From assembly GCF_032191835.1 (NCBI RefSeq), contig NC_083233.1:3162001-3226000 (forward strand): DNA of 64,000 nt, read 5' to 3'. This DNA comes from Heteronotia binoei. Its lineage: Eukaryota. The notes beneath the pieces were generated by a model. That model was not told where the DNA came from and did not search any database. It saw only the letters and a list, made by a program, of their open reading frames with translations. Numbering within the stretch: position 1 is the stretch's first letter; each line of letters begins with the position of its first letter. Both the position numbers and the translations under genes were made by a program. Positions 10,868 through 63,961 of the stretch are shown here, one piece after another.

Positions 10868-11173
10868 TGTTATATATGAGTCAATCTTGTTATCAATGGT
10901 GTTCCTGCTGGCTCATTGGAGCCGGAAGGACTGAGCTTGGGGACTCAGGAGGATCCAAATCCAGACTGCCCTGCTCCAATCACGGGCCCCCTGCTGGTTT
11001 GAATGACCCAATAAGGTGCTAGCCCGGAACCCCAGTGTTGTATATAGTTGGCCCAGCGGGCCCTGTTCTTCAGTCTTGGCAGTGCAGCCACCTACCATGC
11101 TGTACTCAATAAACAGCTTGTTATCACTTCCACCTCGCCTCTTCAGTGCCTAAGAACCCACTATATTATAATA
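10868..11173 (+). mobile_element. Probable solo LTR
   Basis: Begins TGTTATATAT, TATATA box ~11040, AATAAA ~11110, ends ATTATAATA; no clean TSD. Confidence 0.5.
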
Positions 11174-11244
11174 TCCTACTCATATCCTTGCTGAATTAAA
11201 CCATCTTCACACTTTAATTTCTGTTAACAACTGGTTACAGGTGA

Positions 11245-11912
11245 TTGGAGGGTCTGGGAATTGTTTTGAAATTATTTTTTTCTCTTTTTGCTTACTGGCC
11301 ACTCCACCCTTCACTAAATGACAGGAGGAAACTGAAGGAAGAAGATGACTCTATCCAGAGCAGAACAGTGGGCTTGAATCTCGTCCCTCATGCCCCTGGC
11401 CATATCAGCCATTTCATTCCTCACAGTTTGGAGGATGCCTCGTTCGCTCGGCCCTCTTCTTTCCTCCTCCTCATCTGGGACAGGTTGTGCAGGTTCCCCC
11501 CCCCTCCATCCTCATCATCGGGTCGGGGTTCTTCCCGTTCATCCTCTTCCACTGGTGGGGCATACTCTCGCTCCCCTCCTGGGCCTTCCTCCCCAGTCAT
11601 CACTCTCACCCTCCAGGAGTGTCTGGTCAGGATGGCGTCCCTCTGGGCTGGTGCTTCTTCCATCAAGGTGGTTGAAGTTTACAGCTCCCACTTATGTGGG
11701 GTGGTCAGGAGCTGTTGAATGTGCAGAGGGGACCCACGCCCTGCAACTCTCCATGCATCTAAGATGTGCCACGGGGGGGTCCGCACCTCTACTACCTCGT
11801 CCAGTCCTCTTTCCAGAGGATTAGGGAATTCTCTGTTATCTGGAGCTCTTTCCGCCATCCAGTCAGAAAGTTGCCAGTTCAGTTGAAATTCCACGCAGGA
11901 TCACTTTCAAAA
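11245..11912 (-). pseudogene. Degenerate gag-like 5' internal region of an LTR retrotransposon
   Basis: Starts ~50 nt after the LTR at 11913. MAERAPDNREFPNP...EEGPGGEREYAPPVEEDEREE runs in one frame with one stop, then a frameshift into GPSERGILQTVRNEMADMARGMRDEIQAH (coiled-coil-like). Gag identity is inferred from position. Confidence 0.45.
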
Positions 11913-12357
11913 TGTCAAGCATGGAAGTTTCAGATAACCAAGTAATTGTTTAATACAAACTCTTAGTTTATTGATAATCCATTGTTGCTTTGAAAGTGAT
12001 ACAAAGTATTGCAAAGCATAACGTTTTAAGGGTTACATCAAAGCATTCCAGCGTGATATCTCAAAGACATAACAAGAACGTGTGAATTACTACAAACTAT
12101 GCAACAGCCTATCTTTGTGGTTAAAACTTCCCTTGGTCTCAGGCATTCGTCTTACAGTTGATGGTTACAGTGTGGAAACCTTTCAGGGAGGCGCCTGCTA
12201 TCAAAGCCTAACATTCCTACATTTGCTACTCAAAGGTGGGAAAGGGAAAAGGGAGGTGAGAAGAAAGAAGAGCTACTTAGCTTTGATATGCAATTACATG
12301 GGAAAGCATTCTACAGAGAAGCACCAACCTTATCATTTAATACTGAACGTATTGACA
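11913..12357 (-). mobile_element. 5' LTR of a Ty3/Gypsy element with a self-complementary PBS
   Basis: TGTCAA...TTGACA termini, minus-strand AATAAA at 11972-11967, TATA-like TTAAAA at 12029-12024, block homology to the solo LTR at 28937. Confidence 0.75.
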
Positions 12358-12467
12358 GGCAAGAGAAAAGCCCTCAGTTTGGGTTACAGATGGAGAAGTC
12401 ACTCCATGTTTTGCTGCTCACCTTCCCAAAGTTCAGTTCCTAAAGACCACGTGATCACTGAGTGAAA

Positions 12468-12754
12468 GAGCGTTTTCGCACTGACCTTACTCGGGAGTGA
12501 CGTCCCTCTTCACCGTGCAGCATCTGTGCGGATTTCGCACTAATTGCTCAGCAGAACCCGGAAGAGCTGCAAAGACCCACAGCTTTTGCGTCGCAAATGT
12601 AAACTGGTTTTTGGCCAGTTTACATTTGCGACACAAAAGCCGCGGGACTTTGCGGCTCTTCCGGGTTCTGCTGAGCAATTAGTGCGAAATCCGTGCAGAC
12701 GCTGCGCGGTGAAGAGGGACGTCACTCCCGAGTAAGGTCAGTGCGAAAACGCTC
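12468..12754. mobile_element. Palindromic MITE, probably PIF/Harbinger
   Basis: 140-bp arms (12468-12607 and 12615-12754), 7-nt loop, flanked by AAA on both sides (3-bp TSD). Confidence 0.85.
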
Positions 12755-12845
12755 AAAGATCCACACCAAAGGAAGCTGCCCAGCCAGCCAGCCCGAGTGG
12801 AGGGAGCAGTTCTTCGGTGCAGTGGGACCTGCAAGCTCCCCACAG

Positions 12846-27350: not shown

Positions 27351-28936
27351 CCATATTTATCCCCCATTCTTAGGGTTGCCAAGTCCAAATCAGAAAATAC
27401 CTGGAGACTTTGGGGGCGGAGCCAGGAGGCTTTCCCATTCCCTAAAATAAATAAAAACACAGCAGTGCAATCCCCCTGAATAGTCTTCATTTCCTTGTCC
27501 CCCAGGAGCTGCAATTCCAGTAAATAAAAGTGAACACACACTAACAAAGCAGCCAAAATAAACAGAGTTTGCAAGCACATACTTTTGTAATCTCACTGGG
27601 GCTTTATGCACAGGAGCAGCTGTATTTCCAACCAACTTCTACAGACTTACACAGGCACTCTCTCACACACACTTACTGGCTCTGGTTCCTTCCTATACAA
27701 AGACATCTGAAAGGAAAGCAGAGGGACTGCTCTCTCACTCTCTCACACACACGGCTCTGCTGCTGGCTCCTCCCAATACAGCTTTCACTTCCAGATCAAA
27801 TTTAAAGGTGTTTGCGCACATTTTATCATCATCATCAATTAAATTTATGAATCGCCTCATTCCAGCCAATGACGGGCTCTAGGCGATGTACAACAAAGAT
27901 ACACATAAAATCAGTAAAACTGATGAATTAAAAACAATTGCAACTCAGTGGACATTCTTTATGATGTGCTGTAATTCTGCTTTCTCGGCATTGAGATTAG
28001 TCCCTTTTTAAGTGGAGGGGGGAGGGGGTGCCAGCCCAGCAACCGTCACTGTCCTCAAGTAATTTTAAAACACGAAGTGCTTGCAGGCTTCTAAACCTGC
28101 AGAGATCTAAAAGTACATGGCGGTTGTGGCGGCAGGGCTTCCCCCACCAGCCAGCTGGCTGGGGGCTGGGGGGAGCCTGGAAAACCAGGCGTTCCTCTGC
28201 TGGGACTGGGGGATTGGGAAGCCTACCCCTTCTTTCAAGAGCTGAGAGTGGTTCTCCTCCTTCTGTTTCATCCACCTGCTACTTCGGAAGACTTCTGTCT
28301 TAACCAGTCTGCCTGCCTCTTTCTTGTTCTGTAATTATCTGCAAATAACATCCTTAACCCTTGCACTCTCCTACCTTGAAATGGTCAAGGGATGCTGAGC
28401 CGAGTGACTGACATGTAAGTAAGACAATCTGCAAAGAAAGTGATCTCTGCTCCAGAATAGTTTTGCATAGTTTTATACAAGCAGTTTGGTGTTCAGTACA
28501 CTAAAGTGATATTTCATTACTCTCCTTTAGTGAGCTTCTTGAAAGCACCAGTGTACAAGGAGTGCCTCATGCTGTGGAAAGCACAGAGAGGACATGAATG
28601 TTTGCAAATACTCAAAGTAGGACAGAACTTCCCATTTTATCAGCAATTATTGCTTACAACATTTCAGATTAATAATCCAAACTGGAATTGTGAATGTTAC
28701 ATTTATGCCTCCCTATTTAAAATATGACTGAAGTCTTGATTGTTTTGATTTAATGCCAGATAAGAAATCCCACAAGCTGTCAAAAACAAAATGCCACCAC
28801 ATGTCAGTTAGCAAATACCAACAACATTAAATGTTGAAATCAAAAATAATCAAGTGTCAAATATGCATTGTTACAGTTGTAACGTTGCAGTTTTGTGGTG
28901 TTTATGTTTTTATCGTGTTCTCAGGCAGGATCTATG

Positions 28937-29327
28937 TGTCAAGCATTAGATCTCAAAATAACCAGCCCTTGATTTTGAATTGGTTTATTGATAATCCATT
29001 GTGCTCGGATAGGCACCAGATTGGAAGTGATACATTGTAATTCAAGGATACCAGCTTTAAGGGGGCACATCAAAGATACCTTAGGAATTTCTACTCCAGC
29101 GTGTGAAATTCACATGCTTGCTACGTTATCTATTACTGCGGTTTAGCGACATCCTGGGTTCAGACCTGAGCCTGAGAAAGTGTTCCCGGAGGCCTTATCT
29201 TCAAAGAGGACATTCCTGCATTTGCTACTAGTGAGAACTAAGGAAGAGGTTACATGGCTTTGATGTGCAACACATTAGAACACATTAACAATGCAGGCAT
29301 ACCAATAAAGAAACGAGATGCTTGACA
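28937..29327 (-). mobile_element. Solo LTR (391 bp) related to 11913-12357
   Basis: 10-bp terminal inverted repeats TGTCAAGCAT/ATGCTTGACA; perfect 5-bp TSD CTATG; minus-strand AATAAA. Confidence 0.9.
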
Positions 29328-33675: not shown

Positions 33676-35047
33676 TTCTATTTCTCCAGGAGTACCCCTG
33701 TGCAGTAAGCCGACCCTAAGGTAACCAGTCACCAGGAAAAGAAAGACACAGGCAGGCACTAGGCAACTCTGGAAGGGAATGTGAGAGCACCAGCCCACTC
33801 ACTGGGTAATTCCTAAAATGGCCAACTGGTGGCAGCATGCTGAAAAAGTACAAAAAATAACTCCACCGAGATTCAGGTGAACTGAATGACCCAGTTTCAG
33901 GTTTCCATTGCTGGATGAAAACTTGGGGTGGTCACAGGTGGCGATTTCACACACAGTAAATAATGCACTTTCAGTCCAGGATGCTGCCTCAGAGGCATGA
34001 ACCGAGTGGTGCTTGCAGTTCAGTGGGGCTATTTTGCTTCAAGGCAATCAATGGATAACAACAGAACAGACAAGAAGATGACTGGTGTGCTTACTGCAAA
34101 GAGATGTGGCATTGTTGTTCAGTTCCAACTAAATTCACTTTTTATAGTAGAAATAAATGTTCCTCAGAACAAAATTCTCAGTAACCCTCTAGCAATTTAG
34201 ACAATTGGCCTTAAAATATGACTGCACTGAAGACCAGCCTTCTGTTTTGCTGCTTCTTTGCAGTGTACCAAGTTCTCTTAGGCTGCACTTATTGTTTGGT
34301 AGGATAATAGGAAGGATTTCAGACTAGGAATGATTTTGAATTCCTCATCCTTGATATTTTGACCTAAAAATCCCTGCTTCCATTTTGCTTCTCTTTTCTG
34401 TGAACTGAACTTGTGATTCTTTATTTCCACACCTGTATTGTACAGAGGCCAGAGACGTTCAGATGGCAACACGCTTTATTAGCGAGTACATCACAAAGAC
34501 AACATGATGGGGCCGGGTCCCCCATTATATACATTTCCTGGAACAACCTTCTTCCTGGTCAGGTCCAATCCTGGCCAGTTAAACTTCCTGTCACTGATCG
34601 CCACAGGCGGGCTGCATTCGTCCCTTCCAGGCACTGCCCACAGGTGCACTGTGCTGTACTTTCCGGGACGAATGCCAGACACAACACTCCTCCCCCCCAG
34701 TTCACGATACATAGTCTTTCAAATGAGTGGGCAACCACTGTTCTCTGAGCGACCGCCGAGGTTCGATCTGGGGAGTTGGGGCTGCTGCCAGGGGTTCTGT
34801 AGCCGCTGGTTCCTCGCTTTGGGCCACGGTTGGCAGAGCGTTGTCTCAATCCTGCGGAGGTATCTCCCCCGCCCTGTAAGGCTCTTCCGCCAGTGAACCT
34901 GGTGAGCTCGGCAGGGTTGCTTCTTGCGGTGGCCCCGTGCTCTCCCCATTCCCCACTCTCCATGGCCCTGCCAGTTCCTTCGGAAAGGTGCGGCGGCGGA
35001 GTTGGTCTGTGTGTCTACGGAGGAGCTGCCCCCCTTCCGACAAAACC

Positions 35048-37790
35048 TCATATGACCAGGACCTGGTGAGCCGCAGCACCCGAACTGGCAAAGTTCTTGG
35101 CATAGACTGGATCCCCTGGAAAGAACCCCCTAGTGGCCTCCCTGGTCTGGGGGGAACTGCGGAGGTCTGGGACCCGGTTGGGGTGTAGCCTATCAAGCTG
35201 GGTGGTTAACCTCCTGCTCATGAATAACTTGGCAGGGCTTATGCCCTTAGCTGGGTTAGGATTGATCCTGTTCCCAAACAGGAAGACAGACAGTCGGTGG
35301 TCCCAATCCCCTTGGACTATGCAACCCAGGGCCTCCTTGGTTGTGTGAACCATGCACTCCGCTTGGCCGTTAGTGGCAGGGTGAAAGGGAGCGGACCGAA
35401 TGTGGTGGATGAGGTACCTATTCAGGAATTCCTGGAACTCCCGGGAGGTAAAAGCGGTGCCGTTGTCCATCACTACTGTGTCAGGGATTCTGTGGGTGCA
35501 AAAAACCCTCCATAAGGCTCTATCTGCAGCCGCGGTGTAGGTGGAAGCAACTGGGATGACCTCCAGCCACTTCGTGTAAGCATCCACCAAGATAAAGAAT
35601 ATTTGCCCCTGGTATGGCCCCGCAAAGTCTAAGTGTAGCCGGGACCATGGCACCTGATTGGATTCCCAGGTGGATTTGGCTGGGACTCTTGGCAGGATGG
35701 GCACCTCCTAACCCATTCCTCTATCTCTTCATTCATCCCTGGCCACCATACATAGCTCTGTGCCAGAGCTTTCATATGCACTATCCCTGGGTGTGTCTTG
35801 TGCAAGGCTTTGAGCACTTGCTTCCGGAGTGGGGGAAGGACCACCACTCTGCTACCCCAAAGAATACACCCTTTGTGTAAGGAGAGTTCCTCTCGGTGGG
35901 AAACAAATGGTCTGAATTCAGCATCCAATTTGCCCATGGGCCAACCCCTCCCCACCCAGTCCAAAATGCATGCAAGTTTGCGGTCTCTACCTGTGGACCT
36001 GGCTACCTCAGCTTCGTGGAGGGGCCGCTCTGGTAGAGACTCCAGAAGCATCATGTGGTGGGCCGGGGCCGGATCGGGGTCCATCTCCAGTAGCGGAATG
36101 TGTCTGCGTGGCCCATTGCCTTTCCAGGGCAGTAGAGGAGCTTGTAGGTGTATGAGTTGAGGAACTCATTTCACCGCAGGACCGGCTGCAACAGGATCTG
36201 CGGTGCTTGGCGGTCTGGGGCAAGTGGGCCGAGCAGTGGCTTGTGGTCTGTGGCAATCGTGAAGTGCCTACCAAACAGATAGTCATTGAATTTGTATACG
36301 CCCACCACGATTGCCAATGCCTCCTTATCTATTTGGGTGTAGTTGCACTCAGCCTGGTTCAAGGTCCGAGAGTAATAAGCCATGGGGACCTGTCTCCCAT
36401 CCGGGAGTTGGTGGCCCAGGATGGTGCCCACTCCGTAAGGGGAAGCATCACAGGCTAAAATCACGGGGAGGGACTCGTCAAAATGGTGGAGTACCTCATT
36501 TGGAACCAAGGTGTCCTTGACCGCCTGGAAGGCTGTGGCCAGCTTTCTTCCCCAGACCCATGGGGCGCCCTTGTCTAGGAGTCTGTGTAGGGGTTTGGCC
36601 AGGGCTACTTTGTGGGGCAAGGATGAGTAGTAAAAGTGCAGGAGCCCCAAAAAACTTTGCAGCTCCGCCTTGCAAGAGGGGGCTGGGGCCTGGACTATTG
36701 CCCTGGTCTTGTCAGCCGTTGGGTGAATTCCCACGGCATCCACCACAGACCCCAGGAATTCCACCCTTGGCACCCCAAGCGAGCACCTTGAGACCCACAT
36801 TCTGGAAATGGCGGAGCACCTCTTGAAGGTGGCAGCAGAACTCATCAGCATCAGATGCCGCTATCAGAACGTCATTGAAAAGGGGTTGTACTCCAGGAAT
36901 CCCTTTAATGAGAGAGTCCATTAAGCTTTGGAAAATTCCTGGAGCCACGCTGACCCCAAATTGCAGTCACTGCACCTTGAAAGCACCCCAGTGCATAACT
37001 ATGGTCTGCACCTCAGCCGTTTGCTCATCAACCGGAAGTTGTTGGTATGCTTGGGCCAAATCCAGCTGCCTGAAAATCTTAGAGCCGCCCAGAGAGGCAA
37101 AGACATGGCTGAACATTGGGACGGGGTATGGGTGGTCCCGTAGTGCTTTATTTTTTGTGCATTTGTAGTCTGCACAGATGCGCACGTCCCCCATTCGGCT
37201 TGACTGGGGTGACTATGGGGGTTTCCCAAGTGGCGTGGGAGATGAGCTCTAGCACCCCCTGGGCCACGAGGTGGTCCAGTTCGGCTTCAATTTCTGTCTT
37301 AAGCGCAAACAGAACTCACCGAGTCTTCAGCCTTAAGGGCTTAACCATGGGGTCCAGCTGCAGTGCGATAGGTGGCCCCTTGTAGGTTCCCAGAGCCCCA
37401 TCAAATACTTCTGGGAACTCCCGGCACACTTGGTCAAAATTGTGGGCCTGCATGTGGTCTGCCACAATTTTGATGCCCAGGGGCTTAAACCAAGTCAATC
37501 CCAAAAGGGTGGTGAGCCAGCACTTCACCACAAGTATGTTCAAGGCCCCTTTACAATTTTTGAACTCCACCCTAACTCTGGCCCACCCCATGATCTGCAC
37601 TGTATTCTTTTGAAAGTCCTGCAATATGAACTCCGAGGCCGCAGGGCCGGCCAGTTGTGGGGGCAGAGTTTACTGAGGGTGTCCTCCGAAATTATGGAGA
37701 TAGAGGATCCCATGTCTAATTCCATCAGGCAGGGACCCCCCTCGATCAAGACCTGCACTTTGAGCTTGTCGGGGGTGTCCAGGGCAAGTT
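35048..37790 (-). pseudogene. pol: Gypsy pol (PR, RT, RNase H, IN) with stops and frameshifts
   Basis: PR MELDMGSSISII; RT VRICADYK, LDLAQAYQQ, APGIFQ, LFNDVLI; RH LACDASPYGVG, DKEALAIV, TDHKPL; IN HPGI...C..CQ, HLDFAGP, DNGTAF, HPATNGQAE. Confidence 0.92.
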
Positions 37791-37859
37791 CATAATCTGG
37801 ATGCTGTTTGATGCCATCGTGTGTGCATCTGTCAAGTTGTGGTGTGCGGACTAGGGCCT

Positions 37860-38590
37860 CTTGTTGTTTCTGGCACTGCAAGCTCAGGCGATGTGGCCCA
37901 CTTTTCCGCAGCTTCTGCAGTCTGCGTTGCGGTAGGGGCAGTCTCGGCACACTTGGTGCTTGCCCATGGTCTGTTTGGTGTTTTCAGCCCTCTGCGTAGC
38001 TGGCGGAGAAGCTGGTGTGCCCCTTCCTCGTCGAAGCCATCTGAGATGGCAGCCTAGTTCGCGGAAGGGCTGGTGTGCTTCTGTTCGAAGGCAGTTGCTT
38101 GTCAAAGCACTTTCGCGAGGTTGATGTCTTTGTCCTCGTATGCTAGCAACTTTCGGCACATTTTCTCCTCCCTGATGCCAACCGTGAAGCGGTCCAGGAG
38201 GATCTCTTCCAGGTTCCCTGTGAAATCTCATCTCAGGGCTAATCCACAGAGCTCTGCAAGATACTCGGCGGCGGACTCAGCTTGCCCCTGCTGTCTCGTG
38301 TAGAACCCATGCCTGCGTGTGAGACAGGATGGCTGGGGCTCCATGTGCTTTGTCACCGCCTTGACCAGCTGGTCGTAGGTGGCCCTTGTGAGGGTGGTTG
38401 GCGTGATGAGTCACTTCATCAGCTGGATGGTCTCCACCCCGCACAAACTCAGGAGAAGCGCCTTCTTCTCTGCTGCTGCCTCCATTTTGTGCAGCTCTAT
38501 GTAGTAGTTGATCTGGTCTACCCATGATTCCCATAAGTCGGGCCGGGTGACGTCAAATGCCGGTAGGGTTTGTCCAGGAGCAGTAGCCAT
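37860..38590 (-). pseudogene. gag: Gypsy gag with in-frame stops
   Basis: MATAPGQTLPAFDVTRPDLWESW...AESAAEYLAEL...LLDRFTVGI...CRSCGKVGHIA zinc knuckle. Confidence 0.85.
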
Positions 38591-38656
38591 GGCCTCAGCC
38601 GCGGAAGCATTAGAGCTCGGAGCGCAGGACTAGTGGGCTGCTGAAGGCTCACCGGT

Positions 38657-38674
38657 ATCCCATCCTCGTCGCCA
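38657..38674 (-). promoter_or_regulatory. Primer binding site complementary to the tRNA-Ser(GCU) 3' end
   Basis: TGGCGACGAGGATGGGAT, 1 nt after the 5' LTR, matches the recalled vertebrate tRNA-Ser(GCU) end ATCCCATCCTCGTCG-CCA. Confidence 0.85.
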
Positions 38675-41593
38675 GTGTAATGTACTGAGGTCGGAGACGT
38701 TCAGATGGCAACAGGCTTTATTAGCGAGTACATCACAAAGACAACATGGCGGGGCCGGGTCTCCCATTATATACATTTCCCGGAACAACCTTCTTCCTGG
38801 TCAGGTCCAGTTAAACTTCCCGCCACAGATCACCATAGGTGGGCTGCATTCGTCCCTTCCAGGCACCGCCCACAGGAGTGCTGTGCTGTACTTTCCGGGA
38901 TGAACGCCAGACACAACACCACCATTTCCTGATAGCCCCATCTGCACTCTGAAATGCTGGATGCTTGAACTGAGACCTACAGCAATCCCTCTATCTGTCT
39001 GGTGGAGGGTAGTTTTTTATCTGCCTTCCCCTAAAAAATGTGGGGAGTGAATCACTCCATTTCCTAGCAGTTGATCCTGGTAAATTTTTGCTAGCAAGTA
39101 TTAGTCAAATGGATGTTTGTCATGAAGGAGAGAACAGTGAGGACGTCAAGAGGTTAATTGTGTCTCCATCACGAAGGGAAAAACAGCTTTCTGGAGAGGG
39201 CAAAAAGCAGACCGCTTATGAAAGTGCTTCAGTCCTTGCACAACAGACAGAGCCATCCCATGCCCTCCTGCGCTTCTGGAGAGCCTGCTTTGCTTTCAAA
39301 AGGGTTTATTACACAGGAATAAAGCTTTGCCTCGGGCTGAATAAGCAAATGAGGCCTTGGCCTGGAAGTCATTATTTTTAATTATTTTTAATCTGTCCCC
39401 ATTTTTAATAACATCTCATGGACATCCATTTGGCTCTGTTACTTGGACTGCGGAGGAAACCAAAGCAGCTCCAATTGTCAGCCTCTCACTCCCCAGTAGG
39501 CTCCCTTGTCTTCTAAGGCCTCTTGGCTCGTGTGCTCACTGGGCACTAGTTTGCATGCCATGAAGCACAGCCAGATCAAATGCTTGTAGAATGGGAACCC
39601 TGGAAAATCCAAGAGGAGACTGTTGCCAGGCTAAGCCCCACAGCTACTTCTGCCCAAACAATATTAGAAAGGGCATGGGAGAAATTAAACTGCTAAATCC
39701 CACTGCCTGGAGGAAGCTTTGTGAGTGATTCTTCCCCCCCTCCCTTGTGATTATGAATCCCACATCTGTGACCTGACTGGAAAGAGTCCCTAATCAAATC
39801 TCGGCAAAGCTTGCTGGGCTCCGTTGTGCAGTGCATGATCAGCCTGTGGATAATTTACTTTCCTTAACACGGAGGACTGCAAAGATAGCAACCAGTCCCA
39901 GTTCCAGTGCAAAAAGAGCACCTGTATGCAAATAAGGATTTAGGCATAAATTAATTATACCTTTGGACTGGATTTTCAAGGCAGCAGTTAAGTAATGAGG
40001 TACGGATAGGGTAATAGCCTTTTTGCCAGATAGCAAATATAATAAAAGGTGATCATGTGAACACACTGGAAAGTGTGAAATCAAAGGAGAAATAGAAGAC
40101 GTCATGGAAGAATATAGCTCACAATTTTTTTTTTATTTTTTTTTTTTTAAATGGGTGTTTCTGTCTCTGCATTTTCACATGGGCAGACTCCCTGATAAAT
40201 CGGTCTATCTGAGAATCTGTCAAATAGTTCATTAAGAGGTAAGGCATTAAGTCTGGCCAAGAAGAAAAGTCTTTGAAGGGTTGGAAAAGTGAAGACTCAA
40301 GTAATCTGGAAGCAGGGGAAAGAGGAGGTGCTCAGGCCCCACAAAGAGGGGGCACATTTCCTTTTGACATCACTCATAAGTGATGCAAACATGCTCAGCA
40401 TTCCGGCAGAATATTGTCATGAATGTGGAACTCCTGGGGCATTGTGCAGGAAGGCACACCCCTCTCCTTTGATGCATGTTCACATACACATGGACATGCA
40501 CATATCAACATTCTGTAGAAATATAGATTATAAACACAACAACAGTTCAGGCTAGGATACACCATAATGTCATTTCTATCTCATCTGACACCAAAGCAGA
40601 AATGCTGGGATTCTCTCATTAAATTGCTGATTGGGACCTGAAAATTCCATGTGTGAATCCATTTCTGGTGGGGGTTTATGCATAATTCTGAAGATACATT
40701 TCTAAATGAGCTGAGTTCAGTTCCAGCAATTTTGCTTGGGATTTTATAGTGCTGACAAATTATTAGAGGCTGAGGACAGTGCAATGTGTGCAAGGAGCTC
40801 CCCTGTCCCCAGAGATTGTCCTGTTACTTTGGATGGAGGAAGACAATCTGTGTGTGGTTGTTAAGGAGCACCTCATGCACCCAGCAGCTCTCTGTGTGCT
40901 TCCGTCCCATAGCCAGAGATGTTCTGGTGAGGCTGCCTCACACTGCACTGGGAGTAGGCTTGCCAGAGCCTCAGACAGTCCAATATTTTCACTTAGTGTC
41001 CAGGGGAAAAACTGGGGTGAAACATGTTAGCCTCTTAAATGTCCAATGTTCTTTCCAGTTGTTTTCCTGAATACTTGGAGAGTCCAGGAACCAAGTAGCA
41101 GCCACTGTATCTGCTTTTAAAAAAGCAAATAGCTGTCCAGCAACTTTATCCTCAACATCCCAAACCCCAGGATTGATTGGATGGCACCTAGTGATCGGAT
41201 GCTGCACCTTCATGCAGGACAGGCCTAGGGGGCTCTGTGTGCAGTCCCCAGTACAGTTCTGAAAAAATGGACTATTCATCATTAAAAACATCAATACAAA
41301 CGAAGAAATTATTGATGTGCCTATTGTAAAATATAGTTTAACTAGGAATAAGGCCCATTGTGAAGAAAAAGACAACAGGCTCTAGAAAGGGGCTCTGGGT
41401 GAGTGTCCCCCAACCCTTAGAGTCTTCCCACTGGCCAACTTCCCACCCCCACCCACCTCTTCCTCTCAACTACCCCTGCGCCCTTGGCATGCCACTACCC
41501 CCCCCCCCATGATATTCACTCACCCACACCCTTGCTGTCTTCCCACTCATCCAACAGCTGAAACAGATGCTGGCTTCCCTCCCTGCATATGCC

Positions 41594-41998: not shown

Positions 41999-44900
41999 CA
42001 CTGCGCTTCACCTAAAAAATTCCTCTGCGCAGGCCTGAAGGGCATATCCACATACACAACCCACAACGCATCAAGTCCTGCAGCGATGGGCAAGGGGCGA
42101 AACGGCAGGTGGAAGGTGCCACTGGAAGCCGCAGTCCCGATCCTGCATGTAGGCGGTTCAGGGTATTGGTCGCCTGATGCTAACCCGGAGACGAAAGCAT
42201 TTTTCGGCAGCACCCTGAACGACCAAGCAGCCTTATATAGGGACAGCACTGCTTGCTCCACACGGAGAAGGGCCTAGAAAAGGTGGCCTAAACAAAGCTC
42301 GTCTCCTCCCCCCCAGTTGGCTAGCCGCAGTCAACGGGCATCCTTACTTACGGTCAAAAAATAACAACAAAGAAAAGGCATGCACCTGCCTCACAAAGTG
42401 TGCAAAGACTAAAGCTTGCGTGTTGGAACATCAGAACCATGCTTGACACAGTAGACAGTGGTCGCCCTGAACGACGCTCTGCTCTAGTTGCCCACGAACT
42501 TCTCAGGTTGAATATCGACATAGCAGCTCTCAGTGAGGTCCGTTTCCCTGAGGAAGGTAGTCTTCAAGAACACAGTGCTGGCTATACCCTCTACTGGTCA
42601 GGTAAGTCAAAGGCTGAGAGCCGCCTTTCTGGCGTTGGCTTCATGGTCAGGAACTCCATTGCCTCCAAACTTGAAAACCTGCCAACAGGTCACTCAGATC
42701 GCATCATGTCCATGCGCCTCCCACTTCAAAACAAGCAGCATGCAACACTCTTCAGTGTGTATGCCCCAACCCTTCAAGCAGATCCTGCGGAAAAGAACAA
42801 GTTCTATGCTGATCTACACAACCTCGTACGGAAGACCCCTACAGAGGACAAGGTGATCATCCTTGGCGACTTCAATGCCAGAGTAGGTAAAGACTCGGAA
42901 GCCTGGAAAGGAGTACTTGGCAAACACGGCATTGGCAACTGCAATGACAACGGGCGCCTCCTGCTAGAATTCTGCATGGAGCACCAGCTCACCATCACCA
43001 ACACTATCTTCCAGCAGAAGAACAGTCTGAAGACAACCTGGATGCACCCACGGTCCAAGCACTGGCACCTTATCGACTACATTCTGGTGCGCCAGAGAGA
43101 CCTTCGAGATGTCTTACACACCCGAGTAATGCCCAGTGCAGAATGTCATACGGATCATCATCTTGTACGCTGCAATCTCCGTCTTCACTTTAAACCCACA
43201 CCCAGGAGAGGAGGTATCCCTCGGAGGAAGTTTCAGGTTGGCAGTCTCCAGTCAGCCGAAGTTAAAGCTGCCTCCCAGGCAAAACTCCAGTCAAGAATTG
43301 AGGACCCCAGTTGCCCCACAGACCCTTCTCCAGAAGCACTCTGGGAACACCTAAAAACTACTGTCTTGCAGATCTCTGAAGAAGTCCTCGGGTTCTCCAC
43401 AAGGAAGAACAAGGACTGGTTTGATGAGAACAATCAAGAGATCCAAGATTTACTGGCGAAAACGAGATCTGCCTACCAAGCACATCTTGCTCAGCCCTCC
43501 TGTCCTGGGAAAAAAGCAACCTTTCGCGCTGCATGTAGCAACCTCCAGCTCAAGCTTTGAGACATTCAGAATGAGTGGTGGACCAAGCTTGCAGAGAGAA
43601 CCCAGCTGTGTGCAGACACTGGTGATTTAAGAGGGTTCTACGAAGCCCTGAAGGCAGTATATGGTCCATCATATCAGGCTCAGAGTCCCTTGTGTAGTGC
43701 AGACGGCCAAGTGCTCCTCACAGACAAGGCATCCATACTGAACCGGTGGTCGGAGTTTTTTCAGGTTCTCTTCAGTGCCAACCGCGTAGTTCAAGATTCA
43801 GCAATCCACCTCACCCCACTTCAACCAGTGAAAACAGAGTTGGATGAGATCCCCACCCTAGAAGAGACTGTTAAAGCCATCAAGCAACTGAAAAGTGGCA
43901 AGGCAGCAGGAGTTGATGGAATTCCACCAGAGATCTGGAAGCATGGGGGCACATAGCTCACTTCACAAAGTACTTGTCACCTGCTGGGAACAAGGCAAAT
44001 TACCACAGGACTTTCGCGATGCAATCATCATCACCCTATACAAGAACAAAGGGGAAAAGTCAGACTGCTCCAACTACCGGGGGATAACCCTGCTCTCCAT
44101 CGCAGGCAAAATCCTTGCCAGAATACTCCTGAACAGACTGGTGCCCACCATTGCAGAAGAACTCCTCCCAGAGAGCCAGTGCGGCTTCAGAGCTAACAGG
44201 AGTACCATCGACATGGTATTTGTTCTCAGGCAGCTCCAAGAGAAATGCAGGGAACAGAACAAGGCTCTGTATGTGACTTTTGTCGACCTTACCAAAGCTT
44301 TCGATACCGTTAACAGGAAAGGCCTGTGGCAAATCTTGGAACATTTAGGATGTCCCCCAAGGGTCCTCAGCATGATCATCCAGCTACACGAAGACCAGCG
44401 AGGCCAAGTCAGACACTGCAACGACCTCTCAGAGCCCTTCCCAATAGGCACAGGTGTAAAGCAAGGCTGCGTTCTCGCGCCAACTCTCTTTACGATCTTC
44501 TTTAGCATGATGCTTCAAAGAGCCGCAGTAGATCTAGATGATGACGATGGTGTCTACATCCGCTATCGCACCGATGGCAGCCTGTTCAACCTGAGGCGAC
44601 TAAAGGCCCACTCCAAGACAATGGAAAAACTCATCCGAGAGCTACTGTTTGCTGATGATGCTGCACTCGTCTCCCACTCGGTATCAGCTCTGCAGCATAT
44701 GACATCCTGCTTTGCAGAGGTTGCCAAGCTATTCGGCCTAGAAGTTAGTCTGAAGAAGACAGAAGTTCTCCACCAGCCTGCACCCCAGGAAGATTATCAC
44801 CCTCCCTGCATCACTGTGGGTGAATCAGTTCTGAAGACAGTCCAGCAGTTCAGCTACCTGGGGTGCATCATCTCCTCAGATGCCAAGATCGACAAGGAGA

Positions 44901-45655
44901 TTGACAACAGGCTGGCAAAAGCAAACCGTGCATTTGGCCGACTGCACAAAAGAGTGTGGAGCAACAAGCATCTGAAAAAAGGCACAAAGATTAATGTTTA
45001 CAAAGCGGTTGTGATGACAACCCTCATCTACGGCTCCAAATCGTGGGTTTTATACCGTCATCACCTGCGACTCCTCGAGCGCTTTCATCAGCGCTGCCTT
45101 CGCACCATCCTCAACATCCACTGGAGTGACTTTGTGACCAACACTGAAGTCCTCAAGCGGGCGGAGGTTACCAGCATCGAGGCACTGCTGCTGAAGACGC
45201 AGCTGCGCTGGGCAGGGCATATTTGTAGGATGGAAAACCACCGCCTTCCCAAGATTGCCCTGTATGGCGAACTCTCCACCGGCCATCGAATTAGAGGGGC
45301 ACCAAAGAAGAGGTACAAGGACTCCTTGAAGAAATCCCTTGGCACCTGTCGCATCAACCATCACCAGTGGTCTGACCTAGCCTCAGATCGCAATGCATGG
45401 AGGCACACCATCCACCAGGCTGTCTCTTCCTTTGAGAACGCACGCATAGCTGGTCTTGAGGACAAAAGGAGATTGAGGAAGAATCGCACTGCTACAGCAC
45501 CAACCCTAAATCAGACTTTTCCCTGCAGCCACTGTGGCCGGACCTGCCTGTCCCGCATTGGTCTTGTCAGCCACCAGCGAGCCTGCAGCAGACGTGGACT
45601 ATTGCACCCTTCTTAAATCTTCATTCGCGAAGCCAAGCCAAGAGAGAGAGAGAGA
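41999..45655 (+). mobile_element. Near full-length RTE-clade LINE (non-BovB)
   Basis: 11-bp TSD GGACCAGTGCA (41988-41998 and 45656-45666), (AG)n tail, single APE-RT-zinc-finger ORF. Confidence 0.92.
42400..45616 (+). pseudogene. RTE ORF (AP endonuclease, RT, C2H2 finger) with two lesions
   Basis: LACWNIRT, LSEVR, LGDFNARVG, IDYI; VDLTKAFD, GVKQGCVLAP, LFADD; CSHCGRTCLSRIGLVSHQRAC. In-frame TGA at 43558-43560 and a frameshift near 43950. Confidence 0.92.
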
Positions 45656-53607: not shown

Positions 53608-54086
53608 GAGAGAGGCCATGGTTCATGGTATAACACCTGCATTTGGCATGCAGAAGGTCCCAGGTTCGATCCCTGGTGTCTCCCGTTAGAGAACCAGGCA
53701 GTAGGTGAACTGCTGCCAATCTGAGTAGACAATGCTGACCTTCTTCTATTTGTTCATTTGTTTGTTTAATTTGATTTGTAGCCCCCCCCCTCCTTTCTGC
53801 AAAGCAAGTTCAGGGTGGGTTCTATCATAAAAATTATACAGTAAAACCATTTAAATAGTAATACACCAGTTAAAATTTACAGCCTAAACTTAAGGCAAGA
53901 TTAACGGGCTCTGCCTCAGCTGGTCAACCCATCAGTCCGAAGTCCATCAGGGGAGGCCTAATAGGAGGAGGTCTTAATAGCAGGTGATGCCTGTTGCCTC
54001 AACTGAAGGCCTGGTGGAAGAGCTCTGTTTAGCAGGCTCTGTTTTGCCCGGATGGACCAATGGTCTCATTCGACATAGGGCAGCAC
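53608..54086 (+). mobile_element. Squam2-type SINE split by an L2 tail (~53745-54040)
   Basis: Head GCAGAAGGTCCCAGGTTCGATCCCTGG; CTGAGTAGACAATGCTGAC resumes as GATGGACCAATGGTC...GGCAGC. Confidence 0.6.
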
Positions 54087-62699: not shown

Positions 62700-63961
62700 A
62701 TGCCAGCAAAGTCATGTTAAAGATCCTACAAGCTAGGCTTCAGCAGTATGTAGATTGGGAACTACCAGAAGTTCAAGCTGGGTTTTGGCGAGGTAGAGGA
62801 AATAGAGATCAAATTGCCAACATTTGCTGGATTATGGAGAAAGCACGGGAGTATCAGAAAAACGTCTATTTCTGCTTCATTGACTATGCTAAAGCCTTTG
62901 ATTGTGTGGATCACAACAAACTGTGGCAAGTCCTTAAAGAGATGGGAGTACCAGACCACCTCACATGTCTCCTGAGAAACCTGTATAAGGGTCAAGAAGC
63001 AACTGTCAGAACGGGATATGGAACAACTGATTGGTTTAGAATAGAAAACGGAGTTCGACAAGGATGTATATTGTCACCCTGCTTATTTAATTTATATGCA
63101 GAGTACATCATGCGGAATGCTGGCCTGGATGAAGAACAAGCTGGAATTAACATTGCTAGGAAAAACATCAACAACGTCGGATATGCAGATGACACTACTC
63201 TAATGGCAGAAAGTGAGGAGGACCTAAAGAAGCTCTTGTTGAGAGTGAAAGAGGAGAGCACAAAAGCAGGCTTGAAACTCAACATCAAAAAAACTAAGAT
63301 CATGGCATCAGCCCCATCACACCTTGGCAAATAGAAGGGGAAGACATGGAAGTAGTGACAGACTTCACGTTTCTGGGATCCAAGATCACTGCAGATGGTG
63401 ACTGTAGCCATGAAATTAAAAGACGTTTGCTCCTTGGGAGAACAGCTATGGTGAACCTGGGCGGTAAAATAGAAAGTAGAGACATCACCCTGCCAACAAA
63501 AGTCCGTATAGTCAAAGCGATGGTATTCCCAGTAGTAATGTATGGCTGTGAGAGCTGGACCATAAGGAAGGCCAAGCGCAGAAGAATAGATGATTTTGAG
63601 ATGTAGTGCTGAAGAAGACTCTTGAGAGTCCCTTGGACTGCAAGAAGATCAGATCAGTCAGCCCCAAGGGAAATCAACCCAGACTGTTCCCTGGAAGGTC
63701 AGATGCTGAAGCTGAAGCTCAAACACTTTGGCCACCCAATGAGAAGGGAGCACTCCCTGGAGAAGATCCTGATGCTAGGAAAGACAGAAGGCAAAAGAAG
63801 AAGGGGACACCAAAAGAGGAGATGGCTGGACAGTGTTACTGATGTAACAAACAAGAATTTTAGCAGATTTTGGAGGAGGATGGAAGACAGGAGGGCCTGG
63901 TGTGACTTTGTTTATGGGGTTGCAAAGAATCGGACTCGACTGCGACTGAACAGCAACAACA
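62700..63961 (+). mobile_element. 5'-truncated RTE-BovB LINE
   Basis: FIDYAKAFDCVDHNKLW, GVRQGCILSPCLF, YADDTTLMAESEEDL; (CAA)n tail; AACTGCCT repeated at 62687 and 63962. Confidence 0.92.

What the first reader, a model, noticed from the sequence alone, without database searches (positions are those of the whole stretch)
11245..12357. LTR retrotransposon with a tRNA-independent, self-priming (Tf1/sushi-type) signature
Seen: on the minus strand the LTR ends ...GCTTGACA at 11913. One base later comes TTTGAAAGTGAT (11911-11900), with no TGG start as in tRNA PBSs. Its exact complement ATCACTTTCAAA lies inside the same LTR (12000-11989), 24-29 nt downstream of a TATA-like TTAAAA (12029-12024) and 28 nt upstream of AATAAA, so it sits where the transcript should begin. 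A gag-like frame starts ~50 nt after the LTR. Established: S. pombe Tf1 primes reverse transcription with its own first 11 nt annealed to the PBS and released by RNase H, and related Tf1/sushi elements occur in vertebrates (the PEG10/RTL genes derive from sushi-like elements). Inference: this is a squamate lineage of self-priming Gypsy elements with a 12-nt primer, coexisting with the tRNA-Ser-primed Gypsy at 34-39 kb. Only the 5' ~1.1 kb survives here, so clade assignment by RT is not possible.
Basis: partly seen in the sequence, partly recalled or inferred. Interest (0 to 1): 0.8.

Follow-up and report, generated by a model that had tools for sequence, protein, structure and literature searches.

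The report
Self-priming LTR retrotransposon fragment, reptile genome
This is the broken front end of a multi-copy jumping gene whose primer site matches its own repeat instead of a tRNA, a real but expected new example of the self-priming known from yeast Tf1 and vertebrate sushi elements.

Summary
On the minus strand a 445-bp LTR (12357-11913, TGTCAA...TTGACA) is followed, after one T, by TTTGAAAGTGAT (11911-11900). Its exact complement lies in the same LTR at 12000-11989, 29 nt after a TATA-like motif and 28 nt before AATAAA.

Two independent results confirm the LTR borders. A 74%-identical solo LTR at 29327-28937 carries a 5-bp target duplication. Whole-genome reads (about 65-270 copies) break off exactly at 11913.

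A 12-nt match at that place is rare: 3 of 20,000 shuffles, and 0.5% of random window positions. The predicted RNA 5' end folds onto the primer site (-30.8 kcal/mol, z = -4.4). Because the LTR ends at 11913, the primer's 3' end must read ...UUCAAA, so it is not a tRNA CCA end.

Three things remain unshown. The transcription start is unmapped. Compensatory change was not tested. The clade is unknown: there is no pol, the "gag-like" frame has no homologue, and no full-length relative could be fetched. Read depth puts the end of the element near 11330-11375, not 11245.

Self-priming is already described for vertebrate Tf1/sushi elements. This scan had also found and followed up the same layout on other DNA of this genome. 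Verdict: a new member of a known kind, of low interest.

The parts
11913..12357 (-). 5' LTR, 445 bp, termini TGTCAA...TTGACA; U3 is T-rich (34% T)
   Evidence: Sequence. Homology to the solo LTR over its full length. Multi-copy read depth starts near 12357, and loose ends fall exactly at 11913. Composition.
12024..12029 (-). TATA-like TTAAAA (TTAAAG in most copies and in the solo LTR), 29 nt upstream of the 12-mer
   Evidence: variant 12024. Function is inferred only.
11989..12000 (-). Proposed self-primer ATCACTTTCAAA, the predicted 5' end of the transcript (start of R)
   Evidence: Exact complement of the PBS. The block TGTATCACTT-CAA is kept in the 74%-identical solo LTR. The transcription start is not mapped.
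11967..11972 (-). Polyadenylation signal AATAAA inside a 20-nt block identical in both window LTRs
11900..11911 (-). Primer-binding site TTTGAAAGTGAT, one nt (T, 11912) after the LTR; no TGG
   Evidence: Its position is fixed by the verified LTR end.
11873..11897 (-). Leader segment just downstream of the PBS that can pair with U5 11942-11918 (a possible third 'pretzel' duplex)
   Evidence: RNAduplex gives -17.9 kcal/mol against -10.7 +/- 2.6 for shuffles, p = 0.015. It overlaps the 3' arm of the second duplex, so the result is inconclusive.
11376..11899 (-). Leader and internal region. One long frame from the ATG at 11856, with a stop at 11681-11679 and a frame change near the G-run 11494-11508. 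Acidic, with no homologue.
   Evidence: Multi-copy depth declines from about 320 to about 25, and reaches single-copy level below about 11375.
28937..29327 (-). Solo LTR of a sister subfamily (74% identical), with the 5-bp target-site duplication CATAG at 29332-29328 and 28936-28932. It has ATCACTTCCAAT at the primer position.

Best explanation
The stretch is the 5' end (LTR, PBS, leader and start of the internal region; about 1.0 kb) of a truncated, decayed copy of a multi-copy LTR retrotransposon family. The family most likely starts minus-strand DNA synthesis by Tf1-type self-priming.

Proposed mechanism, each step inferred by analogy with Tf1. The transcript starts at or near 12000. Its first 12 nt fold back onto the PBS at 11911-11900, with a possible G-U pair between 11988 and 11912. 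The element's RNase H cuts the RNA after the paired stretch. The released 3'-OH is then extended through U5 and R.

Shown: the LTR, its exact ends, the family's copy number, the perfect 12-nt pairing, the lack of a tRNA-3'-end PBS, and the stable predicted fold.

Inferred: the transcription start, the cleavage, and membership of the Tf1/sushi chromovirus clade of Ty3/Gypsy.
For: (1) LTR identity and borders. The termini are TGTCAA...TTGACA. A sister solo LTR carries a 5-bp TSD. Reads from a same-species whole-genome sample pile up over the LTR. Summed depth is about 130 over U3, about 550 at 11928-11973 and about 320 at 11836-11927, against about 2 on unique flanks. In the three runs, 53, 31 and 31 reads turn into heterogeneous sequence exactly at 11913.

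(2) The minus-strand primer defines the U5 end (established retroelement biology). The PBS must therefore start at 11912-11910, and the primer 3' end must read ...UUCAAA rather than CCA.

(3) That PBS has a perfect 12-nt complement in the same LTR. Chance is 1.5e-4 by shuffling and 5e-3 against the genomic background.

(4) The complement lies 29 nt after a TATA-like motif and 28 nt before AATAAA. It sits in one of the blocks conserved between two LTRs that are only 74% identical.

(5) The RNA 12000-11880 folds with its 5' end on the PBS, extended by CAA:UUG and AUGGA:UCCAU. Energy is -30.8 kcal/mol, z = -4.39, and 0 of 200 shuffles fold as well.

(6) R-U5-PBS-leader is the most abundant, hence best conserved, part of the family.

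(7) Control: the neighbouring Gypsy (34434-38918) has a TGG-initiated PBS one nt after its LTR. It has no self-complement of 10 nt or more (it is absent from the scan).

(8) Literature: self-priming is a common feature of Tf1/sushi elements, including vertebrate ones.
Against: The transcription start is unmapped, and no RNA run was listed.

No compensatory change could be counted. The sister LTR is solo and has no PBS, and 335 variant rows of the read table were hidden. The absence of top-ranked variants in the two 12-mers is not significant (P about 0.28 by my estimate).

The internal frame has no homologue, so neither gag nor the clade is shown.

The third 'pretzel' duplex is only marginal and overlaps the second.

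The PBS was not screened against host tRNAs or tRNA halves. Only one tRNA gene lies in the window, and there is no Rfam tRNA match in 11000-12800.
Confidence: 0.68

Rival explanations
1. The element is primed by a host RNA fragment, not by itself. One candidate is a 5' tRNA half or another small RNA ending ...UUCAAA-3', in the way copia uses an internal part of tRNA-iMet. The complement inside the LTR would then be coincidental or would serve another purpose.
For: The PBS was not screened against a host tRNA set (not available). From my own knowledge, and untested here, the 12-mer contains a UCA-anticodon-loop-like motif UUCAAA. Half-tRNA PBSs are known in Ty1/copia.
Against: This leaves unexplained a perfect 12-nt complement at a transcription-start-compatible place in the same LTR (p about 1e-4 to 5e-3), and its conservation in the sister LTR. 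No tRNA or Rfam match lies in the region. Half-tRNA priming is reported for copia lineages, not Gypsy.
Confidence: 0.12
2. The 12-bp pairing is a structural stem of the 5' UTR, used for packaging, dimerisation or translation control, or a chance hairpin. The true primer is unknown.
For: Hairpin arms of 10 nt or more after any CA dinucleotide are common in this window: 37 hits, mostly true inverted repeats. Retroviral leaders do carry U5-leader stems (established knowledge). The transcription start is unmapped.
Against: The 3' arm occupies the only place where a PBS can be: it starts one nt after a verified LTR end. No other PBS candidate lies within 20 nt. The nearest TGG is 21 nt downstream, which does not fit the LTR end.
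Confidence: 0.12
3. The family self-primes but is not a Tf1/sushi chromovirus. It could belong to another Gypsy clade, or be a non-autonomous LTR family that borrows a self-priming partner's enzymes.
For: There is no pol, chromodomain or gag homology here. Depth of the internal part falls to about 12 copies while the LTR and leader stand at 65-270. That pattern could reflect many non-autonomous or solo copies. Reptiles carry several Metaviridae clades.
Against: Among vertebrate LTR elements, self-priming is so far described for the Tf1/sushi group. The LTR ends fit the Sushi motif CNTNACA, and nearly fit TGTYANR. A follow-up in this scan found the same layout in a sushi-type element of this genome (not tested by me).
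Confidence: 0.15

Closest known systems
Tf1 / Tf2 of Schizosaccharomyces pombe (self-primed Ty3/Gypsy chromoviruses)
   Same: The PBS lies directly after the 5' LTR and is complementary to the start of the element's own RNA rather than to a tRNA. The duplex is of similar length (11 nt in Tf1, 12 here). Further pairing occurs between the sequence after the primer and the sequence just before the PBS. The LTR ends in CA. The sister solo LTR has a 5-bp TSD.
   Different: In Tf1 the start site, the RNase H cut between nt 11 and 12 and the three-duplex 'pretzel' are shown by experiment. Here all three are inferred. There is no sequence similarity, and pol and chromodomain are absent from this copy.
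Vertebrate Tf1/sushi elements (sushi-ichi of Takifugu and relatives; Butler et al. 2001, as cited in PMC4600332 and PMC10085805)
   Same: The host is a vertebrate and the self-priming layout is predicted. The LTR end motif CNTNACA is met and TGTYANR is met or nearly met. AATAAA lies close to the LTR 3' end and U3 is T-rich.
   Different: The clade is not shown for this family. The internal frame has no detectable similarity to any protein in 1.8 billion representatives.
Sushi-type self-priming element found elsewhere in this genome by this scan (s1-322584)
   Same: Same genome, and the same kind of layout. That follow-up reported a 10-nt self match, also present in eight of nine relatives in geckos and snakes.
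   Different: It lies on other DNA and belongs to another family. I did not see its sequence or test its claim.
tRNA-primed Gypsy in the same window (34434-38918, minus strand)
   Same: An LTR retrotransposon with TG...CA LTRs, AATAAA near the LTR end and a PBS one nt after the LTR.
   Different: Its PBS starts with TGG, as a tRNA 3' end requires, and has no complement in its own LTR. It carries RNase H and integrase domains.

Membership tests
LTR retrotransposon | Long terminal repeat with TG...CA ends and short inverted termini | tested here: met
   TGTCAA...TTGACA, 445 bp. The sister LTR has the same ends.
LTR retrotransposon | Target-site duplication of 4-6 bp | tested here: met
   CATAG on both sides of the sister solo LTR at 29327-28937. 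This cannot be tested for the truncated copy itself.
LTR retrotransposon | Dispersed multi-copy family with sharp LTR borders | tested here: met
   Depth is 65-270 times the unique level. Loose ends with heterogeneous continuation fall exactly at 11913.
LTR retrotransposon | gag and pol coding capacity | tested here: not met
   No Pfam match and no homologue for the internal frame. No further Gypsy pol fragment lies in the window. The copy is truncated, so this says nothing about the family.
Tf1-type self-priming (mechanistic class) | PBS next to the 5' LTR is complementary to a sequence of the element's own LTR downstream of the promoter | tested here: met
   12 of 12 nt, 11911-11900 against 12000-11989. 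Chance is 1.5e-4 to 5e-3.
Tf1-type self-priming (mechanistic class) | PBS not complementary to a tRNA 3' end (no TGG) | tested here: met
   The sequence after the LTR is T TTTGAAAGTGAT. Internal tRNA fragments were not screened.
Tf1-type self-priming (mechanistic class) | The complementary stretch is the very 5' end of the transcript | not testable with these tools
   No RNA run was listed. Only its position between the TATA-like motif and AATAAA supports it.
Tf1-type self-priming (mechanistic class) | Three-duplex 'pretzel' RNA structure around the primer-PBS duplex | tested here: inconclusive
   Duplexes 1 and 2 appear in the minimum-energy fold. A candidate duplex 3 gives -17.9 kcal/mol, p = 0.015, but overlaps duplex 2.
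Tf1-type self-priming (mechanistic class) | Primer and PBS change together between copies or subfamilies | tested here: inconclusive
   The sister LTR has two changes in the primer block but is solo, so it has no PBS. The read table hid 335 variant rows, and no top-ranked variant lies in either 12-mer.
Tf1-type self-priming (mechanistic class) | RNase H cleavage that releases the primer | not testable with these tools
   This needs biochemistry.
Tf1/sushi clade of chromoviruses (Ty3/Gypsy) | RT/RNase H/integrase groups with Tf1 and sushi-ichi | not testable with these tools
   This copy has no pol. No full-length relative could be fetched.
Tf1/sushi clade of chromoviruses (Ty3/Gypsy) | Chromodomain at the integrase C-terminus | not testable with these tools
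   Same reason as for the RT/IN phylogeny.
Tf1/sushi clade of chromoviruses (Ty3/Gypsy) | Sushi-type LTR ends TGTYANR ... CNTNACA, with AATAAA near the 3' end (PMC3601003) | tested here: met
   Both LTRs end CTTGACA. The solo LTR starts TGTCAAG, a full match. This copy starts TGTCAAT, 6 of 7. AATAAA lies 54 nt before the LTR end. This feature discriminates weakly.

The most novel reading that the evidence does not exclude
The family self-primes but lies outside the Tf1/sushi chromovirus clade, or is a non-autonomous lineage. In either case its R-U5-PBS-leader module is kept (about 160-270 copies) while the coding part is rare or replaced. That would show self-priming spreading as a transferable RNA module among reptile LTR elements, rather than as a clade trait.
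Probability: 0.12. Interest if true: 0.45.

Novelty: new member of a known kind. Interest (0 to 1): 0.2.

Why it matters
The finding adds a further, well-delimited reptile family to the elements that appear to start reverse transcription from their own RNA. It also gives exact coordinates for primer, PBS and LTR ends that annotation pipelines could use, since those pipelines usually look only for tRNA-type PBSs. It opens no new question. Self-priming is already regarded as a common trait of Tf1/sushi elements in vertebrates, and the scan has already documented it elsewhere in this genome.

Tried and rejected
Searches for relatives, all without result:
- Word-index protein search with the 71-aa internal piece: no candidate.
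- Exhaustive search of 1.8 billion representatives: only two unrelated repeat proteins.
- The 144-aa antisense ORF used as a handle for other copies: nothing.
- A 19-nt conserved R motif against metagenome contigs: seven hits with no similarity beyond the motif, so chance.
- tblastn with the window's own Gypsy pol: no further pol remnant, so the rest of the element is not in the window.

Other negatives:
- The first run search on the element listed nothing.
- Pfam on the internal pieces found nothing.
- Rfam on 11000-12800 found no tRNA or other family over the element.

Readings rejected:
- TGGAATTTCAACTGAAC (from 11892) as a tRNA-type PBS. It lies 21 nt after a verified LTR end, which does not fit the rule that the primer sets the LTR end.
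- The 29-kb LTR as a 5' LTR with a deleted PBS, suggested by a shared 8-mer GATCCTGC after both LTRs. It has a clean 5-bp TSD and no further similarity downstream.
- Codon-position bias of the read variants as a coding test: 9 of 19 at third positions, not significant.

Full report
**1. What is in the sequence**

Read on the minus strand, a 445-bp repeat runs from TGTCAATACG at 12357 to ATGCTTGACA at 11913. After a single T (11912) comes TTTGAAAGTGAT (11911-11900). Its exact reverse complement, ATCACTTTCAAA, lies inside the repeat at 12000-11989 (pair I21).

TTAAAA is at 12029-12024, with its first T 29 nt upstream of the 12-mer. AATAAA is at 11972-11967, 28 nt after the start of the 12-mer.

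**2. Is it really an LTR, and are the borders right?**

Two independent results say yes.

(a) BLAST of the element against the window found a diverged second copy of the repeat on the same strand at 29327-28937. It is 74% identical, with the same termini TGTCAAG...CTTGACA. It is flanked on both sides by CATAG, a 5-bp target-site duplication. This is a solo LTR of a sister subfamily.

(b) I laid raw whole-genome reads of one sample on 11100-12460 at 80% likeness. The sample carries the species label of the best holders of a neighbouring 10-kb stretch.
- Unique flanks have a summed depth of about 0-3.
- The repeat stands at about 130 over U3, about 550 at 11928-11973 and about 320 at 11836-11927.
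- That means tens to a few hundred copies.
- In the three runs, 53, 31 and 31 reads match up to 11913 and then continue into heterogeneous sequence (consensus agreement 0.36-0.38). This is what 3' LTRs and solo LTRs at many loci would give.
- Depth also collapses at the other border, in bin 12342-12387.

**3. Extent of the fragment**

Depth falls steadily through the internal part: about 100 at 11790-11835 and about 25 at 11376-11560. It reaches single-copy level between 11375 and 11330. About 1.0 kb of the element is therefore demonstrable. 11245-11330 is not shown to belong to it.

An unrelated very-high-copy repeat ends at 11170. No other Gypsy pol remnant lies in the window, so the rest of the element is absent.

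**4. More than chance?**

An exact complement of 12 nt or more, starting within 6 nt of the LTR end, occurred in 3 of 20,000 dinucleotide shuffles of the LTR. It occurred at 96 of 17,938 (0.5%) arbitrary window positions, nearly all belonging to genuine inverted repeats.

The complement also falls in the short zone between promoter-like and polyadenylation signals. It sits inside one of the few blocks that stay conserved between the two LTRs:
- TGTATCACTT-CAA;
- the 20-nt block around AATAAA;
- the att end.

**5. Why the 12-mer after the LTR must be the PBS**

In all LTR retroelements the 3' end of the minus-strand primer sets the outer end of U5 (established knowledge). With the LTR end fixed at 11913 by two independent lines, the primer must anneal from 11912-11910 onward. 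Its 3' end therefore reads ...UUCAAA. That excludes a mature tRNA CCA end.

The nearest TGG is 21 nt downstream, which does not fit this LTR end.

The Gypsy element at 34434-38918 in the same window is a useful control. It has no self-complement of 10 nt or more (no entry).

**6. Fold**

The RNA from 12000 to 11880 folds with its first 12-13 nt on the PBS, including a G-U pair between 11988 and 11912.
- The helix is extended by CAA:UUG (11987-11985 with 11918-11916) and AUGGA:UCCAU (11982-11978 with 11925-11921).
- A small stem-loop sits in between.
- Energy is -30.8 kcal/mol against -17.5 +/- 3.0 for shuffles, z = -4.39, and no shuffle folds as well.

This gives the central duplex and the PBS-upstream duplex of the Tf1 'pretzel' described in PMC10085805.

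A candidate for the third duplex pairs U5 11942-11918 with leader 11897-11873. It scores -17.9 kcal/mol, p = 0.015. It overlaps the second duplex, so I call it inconclusive.

That R-U5-PBS-leader is the most abundant part of the family fits a constrained RNA module.

**7. What could not be shown**

- *Transcription start.* No RNA run was listed.
- *Covariation.* The sister LTR has ATCACTTCCAAT, which differs at two positions, but it is solo and has no PBS. The read table hid 335 of its variant rows. None of the 40 best-supported differences lies in either 12-mer, while neighbours at 11890, 11894, 12015, 12022 and 12024 vary at 27-65%. With nine listed variant positions in the 184-nt high-depth zone this is not significant (P about 0.28).
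- *Clade.* The internal frame starts at the ATG at 11856. It has a stop at 11681-11679 and a frame change near the G-run 11494-11508, and it is acidic. It has no Pfam match, no word-index homologue and only two spurious hits among 1.8 billion representatives. An antisense ORF used as a handle and a conserved R motif searched in metagenome contigs also fetched no relatives.
- *tRNA fragments.* No host tRNA set was at hand. The window has one tRNA-Pro gene and Rfam finds nothing over the element.

**8. Comparison with what is known**

In Tf1 the first 11 nt of the RNA pair with the PBS, and RNase H cuts between nt 11 and 12. Self-priming is described as a common feature of Tf1/sushi elements, has been implicated from fungi to vertebrates, and is predicted for related plant lineages.

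Sushi LTRs are reported to end TGTYANR...CNTNACA, to carry AATAAA close to the 3' end and to have a T-rich U3.
- Both window LTRs end CTTGACA.
- The solo LTR starts TGTCAAG. This copy starts TGTCAAT (6 of 7).
- AATAAA lies 54 nt from the end.
- U3 is 34% T against 26% for the window.

Chromoviruses with full-length copies are reported in squamates.

So the element works like Tf1 as far as sequence can tell. Its membership of the Tf1/sushi clade is plausible but untested.

**9. Earlier notes of this scan**

First-stage readers flagged the same signature in many other windows of this genome. One was followed up. It was a sushi-type element with a 10-nt self match, seen also in eight of nine relatives in geckos and snakes, and it was judged an expected new example. 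I did not test those claims. They agree with my reading and lower the novelty.

**10. Verdict**

I put Tf1-type self-priming at about 0.68 as the best explanation. The clade is unassigned. This is a new member of a known kind, of low interest.

Noticed in passing
window 12468-12754: A 140-nt inverted repeat, 94% complementary with a 7-nt loop, lies about 110 bp from the LTR's outer end. It gives only sub-threshold matches to miRNA precursor families (mir-3688, 46.5 bits against a gathering score of 84). It looks like a MITE-type palindrome.
   Followed up: partly
window 11100-11170: A separate very-high-copy repeat (summed read depth about 1,270 against about 2 on unique DNA) ends sharply at 11170/11171. 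It lies just beyond the truncated end of the element.
   Followed up: no
window 11913 (read loose ends): Reads that leave the LTR at 11913 have heterogeneous continuations, but the first 7 letters agree in all three runs of the one sample. In element sense they read TTGACA then CTTAGTT or CTAAGTT. The complement AACTAAG occurs in the LTR right after AATAAA (11967-11961). This could be a sister subfamily with another post-LTR sequence, a target-site preference, or a consensus artefact.
   Followed up: no
window 34434-38918, minus strand: A Gypsy element of only about 4.5 kb, with LTRs 89-93% identical and a purine tract before the 3' LTR (34700-34687). Its PBS starts with TGG at 38674, and it carries RNase H and integrase domains in separate broken frames. 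It served as a tRNA-type control. The tRNA-Ser assignment was not tested.
   Followed up: partly
window 42400-45616, plus strand: A non-LTR retrotransposon with endonuclease (Exo_endo_phos) and reverse transcriptase ORFs of 386 and 573 aa. A further RT fragment lies at 62714-63334.
   Followed up: no
window 28921-28928 and 11894-11901: The 8-mer GATCCTGC follows both the solo LTR (after its TSD) and the PBS of the 12-kb copy. There is no further similarity downstream, so I judged it chance.
   Followed up: yes
window 53612-53684: The only tRNA-like gene in the window is tRNA-Pro (TGG) by ARAGORN. Whether it is a true gene or SINE-derived was not examined.
   Followed up: no
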